64,000 bases of DNA, from NCBI RefSeq assembly GCF_003704095.1, contig NW_020844976.1, forward strand, positions 124,001 to 188,000. The letters are read 5' to 3'. Every line of letters starts with the position of its first letter. Positions within the stretch are counted from its first letter, which is position 1. Positions 36,384 to 39,014 of the stretch are shown piece by piece. The translations under genes were made by a program, and so were the position numbers. The notes under the pieces were generated by a model. It was not told the DNA's origin. It saw only the letters and a program-made list of their open reading frames with translations, and ran no database searches. The stretch comes from Pocillopora damicornis (taxonomy: Eukaryota).

Positions 36384-39014
36384 ATGGTATCATATGCATC
36401 AGAATCAGTCCTTGAGAGCTGCCCAGCTTTTAAAGATGGCTGTCCTTATTCTAAGATTACACAAGACCTTTTTGTGGAAGAAATCAAGAAATGCCCTGAG
36501 TTCAAACAAGGGTGCCCCTTTAAGAACACAGACAATGTAAAGGATATCCTGAAAGAACTTTCCAAGATGCCAGAGATAAAACATCACTCAGGATCAACAC
36601 ATGAACATCTACTTAACATGCTGAAAGCCATTCACACGGAGTCTAAAAAGCTGGAAGAGAAGGTTGGAGAGTGTCCTGCATTCAAGACAGAGGAAGGCTG
36701 TCCTTTCAAAGATGCCAGCAAGGAAGGAAAACCTTTGATAGAGCCACCAGCAGCTGTGTTAGAAGGTTTTACTGCCTCTGATGTCAGTAAACTGAAGGAG
36801 AAGTGTCCTGCTTTCAAAGAAGGGTGTCCATTTGCCAACATGGATAATGAAGTTCTTTTGGAAAAAATTAAGAAATGCCCTGAGTTTAAAGAAGGATGTG
36901 CCTTCAAAGAAGCCAAAACAATCAAAGAGATCTACAATAAGCTGTCACAGATGCCAAGCAGTGACAAGGACTGCCACCATAAAGAAGCTCTGATGGAGAC
37001 CATGAAAGTCATTCACAGTGTTGGCCATGAGAAAGCTGACAAGTGTCCAATCCTTCTGAAGGATGGTTGTCCATTCAAATCTGTTGAGAGTGAAGGAAAG
37101 CCACTTTTCAGTCCAGCAGAATCTGTATTGCCCTCAGAGTCTGAGTCAGAAGAGCCTTCTACCCATTTTGTTAACCTCAAGGATTTAAAAGAAACTTGCC
37201 CAGCATTTGCATCTGGATGTCCATTTGCAAAAGTTGGTGATAAACAGTTGGATGAAGAGCTGAAACAGTGTCCTGAATTCAAAGATGGATGCCCTCATAA
37301 GGACAGTGAAACTATTGGAGATATTTACAAAAAGCTTGCCAGTCTTCCATCCTTCTCTGTGCAGGGATCACATGGTGCTAAGCTCGTAGAAATTTTCAGG
37401 TACATACATGAAGTGTCCAATGGACTGAAAGAGGAAATGGGTGAGTGTCCCATATTTGCAACGGTGGAAGGATGTCCATTCAAGACTGTCTGCAGTGACG
37501 GCAAACCACTGGTTGACAAGCTGGATGGTCAACGTTGGACCAAGATTTTCCAGAGTTCAATTGATGACATCAAAGAAGATGTCAATAAAGAAATTGAGAA
37601 AACAGAACCATCTATTCATCTGTCAAAGGAGTTGAAGAAAGGCACCAAAGTTATCCACAGAGAAGCAGAAAATATTCACTTTGTAAAGGAGTTTGCCAAG
37701 GGAAGGATTGAGAGACAGTGGTATAAAGAACTTTTGGCTGATCTTTACTTTGTGTACAGGTAAGTTCTATACCTGGTTTATGTAAACCTGTTGTAATTAC
37801 GGCTGCTACATTTTCTCAGGACACTCTACTTTCCACCCAACCTCTCCCCTCTTAATTCCTATCTAGGATAGAAACATCAATGTGGGGTTGTTGTGATCCT
37901 TCCTATTGTCATTCCGCAATGAAGATTGAATTTTTCTTTAATTGCTTAGTGTTGACTGCTGTGTATGGCAGCCATTGTTATTTTCATCTCAAAATTTAAT
38001 AAATTGTAGAGGACTAACATTAATGAACAGGGAAACATACAGAAAAAGATTTTAGAAATTTCGATCCATCTTGTAAAAGTGCAGATCAAAATAACAATAT
38101 CTAGAGATATATTGTGAGCCCAAACCTCTACTGCATGCCATAGAGTTATAGCAAATCATTTAATAGGTGTTTGCAAGGGATTTCATTTGCAGAATTTTAC
38201 TTAGTAGGCAGACAACCCTAAGACTGAGTTACAATGCCAATTGTATCACTGCTAATTACCCTCTCCCCCTTTCTATTTCAGAGCACTTGAAGAAGAGAGT
38301 GAGAGACATAAAGATCATGATCTGTTCAAAGCAGTGCATTTTCCTAAAGAGCTTGGTCGTTTGCAGTCCTTGGAAGAAGATATGGAGTTTTATTTTGGCG
38401 AGGAATGGAAGGAGCAAGTTCCAATGTCTGCAGCTACAAAAGCCTATGTTGACAGAATCCATGAAGTAGCTGACAAGGATCCAGCTCTGTTGATAGCTCA
38501 TCATTACACCAGGTACCTGGGGGATTTGTCAGGTGGACAAATTTTAAGAAAAATGGCCACTAAAGCTATGGATCTCCCAAGTACTGGAGAAGGAGTGCAC
38601 TTTTATGTCTTTGATAACATTCCTGATGCTAAGAAGTTTAAGAACAAGTACAGATCCTGCCTTGATGAACTCAGCATTGACAAAGTGAAATCAGATGAGA
38701 TTGTTAAAGAAGCAAATTATGTTTTCCTGCTCAACATTCATTTGTTTCAAGAGATAGATGATATGGCTGGATTTGAAGATCAGGTTACCAAGAAGAAAAA
38801 GAAGCTGACAGTTGAAGAGGTTTACAGTAGCATTGACACCAGTAAAGATCAGGCTCATGGGGTGTGTCCATTTGCAGTCATGGCCAAAAAACCTGCACAA
38901 GGAAACACAACAGCTCCAAGAAGTGAAGGAAGGAATGTTCATCCAGTGCTTCTGGCAGTAATTATTGCAATTGCAGCCATTCTGCTAGGGCTGGTGTTCA
39001 CCAAAATAATGTGA
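36384..39014 (+). CDS. HMOX: Heme oxygenase with a large N-terminal Cys-Pro repeat array; 2 coding exons (36384-37759, 38282-39014), about 702 aa
   Basis: Proximal-His helix LSKELKKGTKVIHREAENIHF, then YKELLADLYFVYRALEEE, FPKELGRLQSLEEDM, AHHYTRYLGDLSGGQIL (HO signature), a C-terminal CPF motif and a hydrophobic tail anchor VLLAVIIAIAAILLGLVF. The phase-2 intron 37760-38281 (GTAAGT...TTTCAG) joins the two ORFs in frame. A splice acceptor at 36374 implies an upstream exon. Confidence 0.95.
36420..37520 (+). repeat. Protein-coding repeat array: three ~128-131 aa super-repeats, each with three twin Cys-Pro motifs
   Basis: Units start at ~36420, ~36804 and ~37197. Motifs: CPAFKDGCPY, CPEFKQGCPF, CPAFKTEEGCPF / CPAFKEGCPF, CPEFKEGCAF, CPILLKDGCPF / CPAFASGCPF, CPEFKDGCPH, CPIFATVEGCPF. 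Each unit ends in (E/D)GKPL. Confidence 0.95.

What the first reader, a model, noticed from the sequence alone, without database searches (positions are those of the whole stretch)
36384..39014. Heme oxygenase fused to a ~370-aa array of nine twin Cys-Pro motifs
Seen: a complete HO domain (proximal His in KVIHREAEN, GDLSGG signature, tail anchor) in the same exon and frame as an N-terminal array with 17 Cys-Pro dipeptides plus one Cys-Ala, arranged as nine CPxFx2-4GCPF-like motifs. The protein is about 702 aa. Established: HO-1 and HO-2 are about 290-320 aa. Cys-Pro heme regulatory motifs (HRMs) bind ferric heme or act as thiol/disulfide switches in HO-2, BACH1, ALAS1, HRI and yeast Hap1, usually in a few copies. 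Inference: with a tail anchor the array faces the cytosol, where it could act as a high-capacity heme or metal buffer, a substrate-delivery arm, or a redox/heme-dependent regulator of the enzyme. I know of no characterised HO with this architecture, but I cannot search to confirm novelty.
Basis: partly seen in the sequence, partly recalled or inferred. Interest (0 to 1): 0.9.

Follow-up and report, generated by a model that had tools for sequence, protein, structure and literature searches.

The report
Coral heme oxygenase with Cys-Pro domains
This stony coral's only detectable heme-degrading enzyme carries three copies of an old, unnamed domain built on six cysteine-proline motifs; the domain sits on heme oxygenases in several distant eukaryote groups and probably captures heme or a metal, though that has not been tested.

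Summary
A two-exon gene (36384-37759, 38282-39014, + strand) encodes a 702-aa tail-anchored heme oxygenase (HO). Its first 385 residues are three ~128-aa units, each with three twin CPxF..GCPF motifs: 17 Cys-Pro plus one Cys-Ala.

RNA contigs from four studies show the predicted splice. They tile the array, in overlapping pieces, on to the HO exon.

The array is not a loose string of heme regulatory motifs. Each unit is a conserved domain with six Cys (93-100%), a Pro after each (82-97%) and one His (89%). It has no Pfam name, no solved relative and no fold match.

The fusion is not coral-specific. One unit precedes HO in a jellyfish, dinoflagellates and oomycetes. Arrays without HO occur in corals, a choanoflagellate and amoebozoans. 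HO is by far the commonest partner.

The triplication predates the split of anemones and stony corals. A two-unit paralog without HO lies at 55471-56364; this scan had already noted it and the unit, on this same window.

Best reading (about 0.45): a cytosolic module that binds heme through Cys-Pro thiolates and feeds, buffers or gates the enzyme. The main rival is a Zn, Fe or Fe-S site. I found no paper on this architecture.

The parts
36296..36383 (+). 5' untranslated region, minimal extent. Lower-depth RNA contigs reach back to about 35483.
   Evidence: RNA contigs start at 36296 (X10), 35534 (X5) and 35483 (X1) and run unspliced into the ORF. An in-frame TAG at 36372-36374 lies just upstream of the ATG.
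36384..37759 (+). Exon 1: start codon, three Cys-Pro units, a linker, and the first ~48 residues of the HO domain including the proximal His (H425, 37656-37658).
36384..36767 (+). Unit 1 (residues 1-128): twin Cys-Pro motifs at C13/C20, C37/C44 and C97/C106; conserved His84.
36768..37160 (+). Unit 2 (residues 129-259): twin motifs at C141/C148, C165/C172 (second half is Cys-Ala) and C221/C229.
37161..37538 (+). Unit 3 (residues 260-385): twin motifs at C272/C279, C296/C303 and C355/C364. This is the unit type kept next to HO in the single-unit Actinia HO.
37760..38281 (+). Intron, GT..AG, 522 nt.
   Evidence: Sequence. All four RNA runs laid show a joint that skips these 522 nt.
38282..39014 (+). 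Exon 2: rest of the HO core (GDLSGG at 38520-38537), the C-terminal Cys-Pro-Phe motif (C654-P655, 38865-38870), the hydrophobic tail anchor (residues 680-698, 38943-38999) and the stop codon (39012-39014).
39015..39790 (+). 3' untranslated region.
   Evidence: RNA contigs run from 38279 to 39732-39790 in four runs.
55471..56364 (-). Main exon of a paralog with no HO domain: two units plus one extra twin motif. It is 85.8% identical in DNA to 36419-37132. It has no in-frame ATG of its own, so a short upstream exon is needed.
   Evidence: The protein is identical to P0024 and orthologous to Stylophora P0027.

Best explanation
The gene encodes a canonical HO resembling vertebrate HO-2, anchored by a C-terminal tail. 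It is the only PF01126 gene found in this coral genome. Its cytosolic N-terminus carries three copies of an ancient, unnamed eukaryotic domain of about 125 aa, with six invariant Cys-Pro dipeptides arranged as three twin CPxF..GCPF loops after helices, plus one conserved His.

Shown: the gene model, its transcription, the domain's conservation, its near-exclusive partnership with HO, and the age of the triplication.

Inferred: each unit binds ferric heme through Cys-Pro thiolates, possibly with the conserved His as second axial ligand. That is the chemistry of the heme regulatory motifs (HRMs) of HO-2. On this reading the array acts as a high-capacity heme-capturing arm that buffers labile heme and hands it to, or gates, the catalytic core. 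The paralogs without HO would act as soluble heme buffers or carriers.
For: Gene model and transcription. The splice 37759/38282 appears in RNA runs from four studies, and a 2464-nt contig joins 36788-37756 to 38279-39790.

Active-type HO: PF01126 above cut-off on both exons, with H425 and GDLSGG present. Exon 2 is closest to human HO-2 (6e-52) and HO-1 (8e-51). The C-terminal Cys-Pro-Phe motif sits where the HO-2 HRMs sit.

Single HO gene: the PF01126 search of the whole genome found only this gene.

Domain conservation: in 158 non-redundant units the six Cys are 93-100% conserved, the Pro after each 82-97%, and the His 89%. A Pro after every ligand-type Cys is the defining mark of HRMs and is not a requirement of Zn or Fe-S sites (my knowledge). 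In the choanoflagellate and amoebozoan arrays every Cys, or all but one, is Cys-Pro.

Link to heme breakdown: 39 of 50 mid-size homologs carry HO and no other recurrent partner appeared. The fusion occurs in cnidarians, dinoflagellates and oomycetes.

Selection: the array is 57% identical between coral and anemone, against 63% for the HO core, 23% for the linker and 29% for the tail.

Precedent: HO-2 HRMs bind heme through the Cys of a Cys-Pro, often with a distal His, and help load heme into the catalytic site (PMC8808069 and the work it cites, PMC7170523).
Against: No binding was tested, and no tool here places a ligand.

Known HRMs are short motifs in flexible regions. Here the spacing is fixed and AlphaFold2 gives a moderately confident compact fold (pLDDT 69, pTM 0.51), as expected for a structural metal site. 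Six Cys plus one His could equally build Zn or Fe-S sites.

In human cells the HO-2 HRMs were not needed for heme buffering (PMC8808069), so the antenna role is not established even for the model system.

Planoprotostelium P0055 starts with a signal-peptide-like segment. That would put its motifs outside the cytosol, where disulfides are possible.
Confidence: 0.45

Rival explanations
1. The unit is a structural or functional metal-binding domain. It could hold Zn(Cys)4 plus a Cys2His-type site, or Fe(II) or an Fe-S cluster. Possible roles: fold a protein-interaction module, capture the iron that HO releases, or relay electrons to the core.
For: Number and spacing of the six Cys and one His are invariant across distant eukaryotes. 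The model became compact and moderately confident once the alignment was deepened. The location is cytosolic, where invariant Cys are usually metal ligands (my knowledge). There are weak, sub-threshold resemblances to Cys-rich metal families: Fer4_11 at 14.9 bits, and zf-CCCH_DUS3L at 36.9 bits on Physarum P0068.
Against: A conserved Pro after all six Cys is not explained by Zn or Fe-S ligation. The spacing within a twin motif varies from 6 to 9 residues in amoebozoan arrays, which is unusual for a metal knuckle. There is no significant sequence or fold match to any solved metalloprotein. The window protein stays below every Pfam cut-off apart from HO.
Confidence: 0.3
2. The twin Cys pairs form a thiol/disulfide (or NO/CO/ROS-reactive) redox switch, or a heme-dependent degron. 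It would regulate HO activity, stability or partner binding without serving as a reservoir.
For: The two HO-2 HRM cysteines form such a switch (reference titles listed in PMC8808069: Yi & Ragsdale 2007; Yi et al. 2009), and an HRM of HO-2 affects the interaction with cytochrome P450 reductase (PMC11900463, title and abstract). Pairs of Cys 6-8 residues apart could close into disulfide loops.
Against: Eighteen switch cysteines, together with arrays of 2-6 units that lack HO, look like capacity rather than switching. Most of the domain's conserved positions are the Cys-Pro motifs and the aromatic or basic residues beside them, which fits a ligand pocket.
Confidence: 0.15
3. The fusion is a gene-model artefact: the array is not translated together with the HO.
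For: Short-read contigs break inside the array at 36737-36817 and 36977-37010.
Against: Those breaks coincide with exact 31-mers shared with the paralog, and overlapping contigs bridge them. The array and the proximal His share one exon and one frame, with no Met between M352 and H425. Full-length annotated orthologs have the same layout: Actinostola P0019 at 707 aa and Desmophyllum P0015. The only joint seen in RNA is the predicted intron.
Confidence: 0.03

Closest known systems
Vertebrate heme oxygenase-2 (HMOX2) with its C-terminal heme regulatory motifs
   Same: Canonical HO core: exon 2 matches human HO-2 at 6e-52, with the proximal His and GDLSGG present. A C-terminal tail anchor. A Cys-Pro-Phe motif between core and anchor, at C654. 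In HO-2 the Cys-Pro motifs bind ferric heme and help load the active site (PMC8808069 and PMC7170523 cited therein).
   Different: HO-2 has two to three isolated Cys-Pro motifs and no N-terminal domain. Here 17 further Cys-Pro lie N-terminal to the core, organised as three copies of a conserved ~125-aa domain. That domain is absent from vertebrate HOs.
Proteins with multiple heme regulatory motifs (BACH1, ALAS1, yeast Hap1, IRP2, Rev-erb beta)
   Same: Several Cys-Pro dipeptides, each followed by a hydrophobic residue. The same Cys-Pro-Phe triad occurs in the ALAS1 and HO-2 motifs (my knowledge).
   Different: Those motifs are scattered and not homologous between proteins. Here they have fixed twin spacing inside a repeated domain found from amoebozoans to cnidarians. 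The density is also much higher: 6 per ~125 aa.
Single-unit HOs of dinoflagellates, oomycetes and a jellyfish (Durusdinium P0091, Gymnodinium P0104, Aphanomyces P0146/P0150, Sanderia P0059); all uncharacterised
   Same: One N-terminal unit with the same six Cys-Pro and the His, followed by the same HO core. Several of those inspected also carry a C-terminal Cys-Pro-Phe motif and a tail anchor.
   Different: One unit instead of three. The three-unit form is seen only in stony corals and anemones (hexacorals), and octocorals have two units.
CCCH zinc fingers and 4Fe-4S ferredoxin motifs
   Same: A superficial resemblance: C-x-x-F-x-x-G-x-C in CCCH fingers, and a Cys-Pro ending in the ferredoxin motif. 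Weak Pfam hits to PF25585, PF15965 and PF13247.
   Different: The third Cys and the His of the CCCH pattern are missing. On the window's own proteins, and on all but two of the homologs scanned, these hits stay below the curated cut-offs. There is no fold or sequence match to solved members.

Membership tests
Canonical heme oxygenase (Pfam PF01126; HO-1/HO-2 type) | Profile match above the curated cut-off across the whole domain | tested here: met
   Exon 1 gives 44.3 bits (profile positions 2-48) and the exon-2 ORF gives 176.7 bits (positions 69-204); the cut-off is 23. Positions 49-68 lie at the start of exon 2 (positions 46-204 matched there).
Canonical heme oxygenase (Pfam PF01126; HO-1/HO-2 type) | Proximal His in the first helix and the Gly-rich distal-helix motif GDLSGGQ | tested here: met
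   H425 lies in KVIHREAEN, and YLGDLSGGQ covers 537-545. It aligns residue for residue with human HO-2.
Canonical heme oxygenase (Pfam PF01126; HO-1/HO-2 type) | Heme to biliverdin catalysis | not testable with these tools
   Needs an enzyme assay.
HO-2-like subtype | Cys-Pro motif(s) between the catalytic core and a C-terminal membrane anchor | tested here: met
   One Cys-Pro-Phe at C654, then a hydrophobic stretch at 680-698 that ends three residues before the C-terminus. The same motif occurs in the anemone and oomycete HOs. No transmembrane predictor was run.
Heme regulatory motif (HRM) | Cys-Pro dipeptide followed by a hydrophobic residue | tested here: met
   17 Cys-Pro in the array, each followed within two residues by Phe, Ile or Tyr, except C303-Pro-His. 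The Pro is 82-97% conserved family-wide.
Heme regulatory motif (HRM) | Reversible binding of ferric heme through the Cys thiolate | not testable with these tools
Spectroscopy is needed.
Heme regulatory motif (HRM) | Short motif in a flexible, non-homologous context | tested here: not met
   The motifs sit at fixed spacing in a conserved domain that models with pLDDT 69. It may work like an HRM, but it is a domain family of its own.
CCCH or TRAF-type zinc finger; 4Fe-4S ferredoxin | Profile match above cut-off and the full ligand pattern | tested here: not met
   On the window protein Fer4_11 gives 14.9 bits against a cut-off of 26.2, and there is no zinc-finger hit. Two hits on homologs pass the whole-protein cut-off: zf-CCCH_DUS3L at 36.9 bits against 30 on Physarum P0068, covering 17 of 32 profile positions, and zf-TRAF_2 at 30.2 against 27 on Dendronephthya P0035. 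In neither does any single stretch pass on its own.

The most novel reading that the evidence does not exclude
The six-Cys-Pro unit is an unrecognised, ancient eukaryotic heme-handling (or heme-iron-handling) domain and the ancestral companion of HO. Fused copies would load or gate the enzyme. The abundant arrays without HO in corals, choanoflagellates and amoebozoans would be dedicated cytosolic heme buffers or chaperones, a class of protein long sought in eukaryotic heme trafficking.
Probability: 0.3. Interest if true: 0.85.

Novelty: new variant of a known kind. Interest (0 to 1): 0.66.

Why it matters
How cells carry and buffer free heme, and what the Cys-Pro motifs of HO-2 are for, are open questions. 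This is a natural enzyme in which that motif is multiplied about eighteen-fold, organised into a conserved domain, and fused to HO in several distant eukaryotic lineages. That gives a tractable system: one 125-aa unit, a three-unit array, and a free paralog. With it one can test whether Cys-Pro modules capture heme and pass it to HO.

The gene is also used in coral stress studies as a plain "HO-1" marker (PMC12350770). Those readings should allow for more than half of the protein being something else.

Tried and rejected
Naming the domain. Pfam gave nothing above cut-off on the array. The PDB sequence search gave best E 0.19 (RicA, FTO), which is chance level. The ESM Atlas search was blank. 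Foldseek against the PDB gave best E 3.6. The wide VIA-align search gave best Z 4.1.

First structure model. With a 36-sequence alignment the pLDDT was only 53, too poor to use.

Large TIR / STAND-NTPase proteins that matched the unit profile (P0139, P0175, P0177, P0239). I rejected these as false relatives. They carry a different 24-aa repeat, QPQFADKCPW, with one Cys per repeat.

It gave no verdict.

The joined two-exon protein was built only inside scripts. It was not sent to any search or folding tool. Searches went exon by exon by reference, or used the natural full-length ortholog P0019.

One search was a mistaken empty call.

Six paper searches found nothing on this architecture.

P0016, a 267-aa protein 99% identical to the query, is a truncated copy or allele of this same gene, not a separate paralog.
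Full report
**1. The observation**

The + strand ORF 36384-37763 is open for 459 aa. Exon 1 ends at 37759 before GTAAGT. An AG acceptor at 38280-38281 opens exon 2 at 38282. Joined inside a script, the two exons give a 702-aa protein ending at the stop 39012-39014.

An in-frame TAG lies four codons upstream of the ATG.

Residues 1-385 contain 20 Cys, 17 of them followed by Pro. 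They form nine twin motifs of the type CPxF-x2-4-GCP[FYH], one of which has Cys-Ala in its second half. By composition this is not chance. The binomial P is about 4e-17, and 100,000 shuffles gave no more than 8 Cys-Pro.

Pfam sees heme oxygenase (HO, PF01126) from residue 412 of exon 1 (44.3 bits) and across exon 2 (176.7 bits; cut-off 23). The proximal His (H425, KVIHREAEN), YLGDLSGGQ (537-545), one further Cys-Pro-Phe at C654 and a hydrophobic C-terminal stretch (680-698) are all present. Exon 2 is closest to human HO-2 (6e-52) and HO-1 (8e-51) among solved structures.

**2. Is it expressed as one protein?**

Contigs from four RNA runs, each from a different study, were laid on 34800-40500. 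All four show a single joint that skips 522 nt with GT..AG ends, which is the predicted intron. No other joint appears.

One 2464-nt contig (run X8) runs 36788-37756 and then 38279-39790. That links units 2-3 and the HO N-terminus to exon 2 and the 3' UTR. Further contigs cover 35483/35534/36296 to 36737-36748, and 36708-36817.

The contig breaks inside the array fall exactly on 31-mers shared with a paralog in the same window (36719-36773, 36775-36817, 36948-36995, 37003-37039). They are assembly breaks, not transcript ends.

Independently of RNA, the array and the proximal His lie in the same exon and frame, and there is no Met between M352 (inside unit 3) and H425. A catalytically complete HO therefore cannot be made from an internal AUG downstream of the array.

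Contigs cannot define a transcription start, so the exact 5' end is open.

**3. What the array is**

It is three tandem copies of one unit: residues 1-128, 129-259 and 260-385, with units 2 and 3 43% and 41% identical to unit 1. Each unit carries three twin motifs (A, B and C), with helices before each motif and a long helix holding a conserved His before motif C.

A profile of the unit recovers 242 near-complete units from the proteins fetched. After removing sequences over 80% identical, 158 units remain:
- the six Cys are 93-100% conserved;
- the Pro after each Cys is 93, 97, 94, 82, 94 and 90% conserved;
- the flanking Phe are 86-100% conserved;
- the His is 89% conserved.

A second His (H67/H68), invariant in the coral units, is the majority residue at that position in wider alignments but falls below the 60% listing threshold in the non-redundant set. 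The ligand set is therefore Cys6-His1 rather than Cys6-His2.

No Pfam family reaches its cut-off on the array. The PDB sequence search gives nothing significant. The ESM Atlas search is blank.

AlphaFold2 gave pLDDT 53 with 36 sequences. With 95 sequences it gave pLDDT 69.3 and pTM 0.51: helices at 7-12, 29-34, 52-60 and 71-94, and a short hairpin after motif C. The gain with alignment depth suggests a real domain whose fold may need its ligand.

That model matches nothing solved. Foldseek's best E is 3.6 and VIA-align's best Z is 4.1. With a model of this quality, that is absence of evidence, not proof of a new fold.

**4. Distribution and partners**

The word-indexed search with residues 1-390 found 135 proteins.

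| Group | Architecture | Examples |
|---|---|---|
| Stony corals and sea anemones | three units + HO | Actinostola P0019 (707 aa, HO at 410-614), Desmophyllum P0015 (annotated fragment) |
| Octocorals | two units + HO | Xenia P0048 |
| Actinia | one unit + HO | P0054 |
| Jellyfish | one unit + HO | Sanderia P0059 |
| Dinoflagellates | one unit + HO | Durusdinium, Gymnodinium, Yihiella, Biecheleria |
| Oomycetes | one unit + HO | Aphanomyces astaci, A. invadans |
| Corals, octocoral, Actinia | arrays without HO | Stylophora P0027, Dendronephthya P0035, Actinia P0061 |
| Choanoflagellate | arrays without HO | Salpingoeca urceolata P0044 |
| Amoebozoans | arrays without HO | Planoprotostelium, Physarum, Vermistella, Clastostelium |

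The exhaustive profile search of 1.84 billion representatives found only 229 clusters at E <= 0.001, so this is a small family.

Of 50 mid-size hits, 39 carry PF01126, and no other family recurs. The one other genuine partner seen is an F-BAR/RhoGAP protein of the fungus Gonapodya.

Large TIR/STAND proteins in the hit list are false positives with a different one-Cys repeat.

In the choanoflagellate and amoebozoan arrays every Cys, or all but one, is part of a Cys-Pro (19 of 19, 24 of 24, 41 of 42).

No bilaterian protein appeared among the named hits. The searches have length and word limits, so this is not proof of absence.

**5. History within Cnidaria and within this genome**

In a maximum-likelihood tree of 59 units, units 1, 2 and 3 of hexacoral HOs form three separate clades with support 100/100, 100/99 and 98/96. 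Each clade contains both anemone and stony-coral sequences. The triplication therefore predates their divergence and has been kept since.

Between this coral and the anemone, identity is 57% for the array, 63% for the HO core, 23% for the linker and 29% for the tail.

The single-unit Actinia HO keeps a unit-3-type copy.

The paralog at 55471-56364 (- strand) has units that nest inside the unit-1 and unit-2 clades and has a Stylophora ortholog. It arose by duplication of the 5' part of the HO gene; the two are 85.8% identical in DNA over 716 nt.

A PF01126 search of the whole 234-Mb assembly found only this gene. The enzyme with the array therefore appears to be the coral's sole canonical HO.

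The unit profile finds 21 matches in the genome. They include divergent two-unit genes in tandem clusters on two other contigs.

**6. How it most likely works**

Topology is read from the sequence: a C-terminal anchor and no N-terminal signal peptide put the array in the cytosol. Invariant Cys there are normally ligands rather than disulfides (established knowledge).

Two features point to heme:
- The domain occurs almost only with HO.
- All six conserved Cys are followed by a conserved Pro and a nearby aromatic residue. That is the defining signature of HRMs. The same protein carries an HO-2-type Cys-Pro-Phe motif at its C-terminus.

In HO-2 such motifs bind ferric heme through the Cys, often with a distal His, and contribute to loading the catalytic site (PMC8808069 and PMC7170523 cited there).

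I therefore favour, at about 0.45, a heme-capturing arm of up to about 18 sites. It would buffer labile heme and pass it to, or gate, the core. The free arrays would act as soluble buffers or carriers.

Against this, fixed spacing and a compact model fit a Zn, Fe or Fe-S site (0.3). That site could fold an interaction module, trap the iron HO releases, or relay electrons. A thiol/disulfide or gas-responsive switch, or a degron, is a third option (0.15). An artefactual gene model is nearly excluded (0.03).

None of these can be separated without biochemistry.

**7. Known or new?**

Six full-text searches found no description of this architecture or domain. Coral studies use the gene as an "HO-1" expression marker without comment on its structure (PMC12350770).

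The proteins are already in public databases under generic names.

I class it as a new variant of a known kind: an HO-2-like enzyme with Cys-Pro motifs, built on a domain family that is unnamed and uncharacterised as far as these tools show.

Two earlier notes of this scan on the same window raised the folded-domain idea and the free paralog. Both are partly borne out here.

Noticed in passing
window 55471-56364 (-), perhaps extending to about 57100: Paralog with no HO domain: two units plus an extra twin motif (CPASDSGCPF). The ORF opens behind an acceptor-like ...CTTCCTTCAG and has no in-frame ATG, so a small upstream exon is needed. The 110-nt RNA contig at 36708-36817, nearly all of whose 31-mers are shared with this paralog, has much higher depth than its HO-specific neighbours (3894 against 142 in run X5). 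That hints, indirectly, that the paralog is the more abundant transcript.
   Followed up: partly
G000:C3172 about 229-289 kb and G000:C2425 about 85-102 kb (loci L006-L010): Tandem clusters of divergent genes with one unit per exon and two units per gene. Some copies have lost the first Cys of motif C, and two matches contain stop codons. This is a wider family expansion in the coral genome.
   Followed up: partly
P0044 (Salpingoeca urceolata, 418 aa): Three units, then a lone Cys-Pro, then a C-terminal hydrophobic tail, with no HO domain. It looks like a tail-anchored array on its own, as if the catalytic core had been dropped.
   Followed up: no
P0055 (Planoprotostelium fungivorum, 630 aa, named 'erythrocyte binding protein'): 41 of 42 Cys are Cys-Pro, in a 4-motif repeat with His-rich tracts after every fourth motif. 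The N-terminus is hydrophobic and resembles a signal peptide, so this relative may be secreted. The database name looks spurious.
   Followed up: no
window 38865-38870 (C654-P655); P0019, P0054, P0146: The C-terminal motif CPFA.M(A) before the tail anchor is shared by coral, anemone and oomycete HOs. It resembles the HO-2 HRM region, which suggests the C-terminal HRM is ancestral in eukaryotic HOs rather than a vertebrate HO-2 novelty.
   Followed up: partly
window 34991-35181: Very high summed RNA depth (up to 3406) with contigs that begin at 35059 or 35072 and continue upstream into unrelated sequence. This is probably a repeat or an exon of another abundant transcript just upstream of the HO gene.
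   Followed up: no
window 35483-36383: RNA contigs extend unspliced up to about 900 nt upstream of the start codon, at lower depth than the coding region. This could be a long 5' UTR, an alternative upstream start, or an overlapping transcript.
   Followed up: no
P0139, P0175, P0177, P0239 (1166-1419 aa): TIR and/or STAND-NTPase (AAA_16) proteins with a C-terminal array of 24-aa QPQFADKCPW..L.G.DW..LL repeats. They are unrelated to the unit but were picked up by its profile.
   Followed up: partly
P0016 (267 aa): A 99%-identical truncated copy or allele of this gene from another assembly. It has Arg in place of the conserved His of unit 2 and a two-residue deletion in the Ser/Glu linker.
   Followed up: partly
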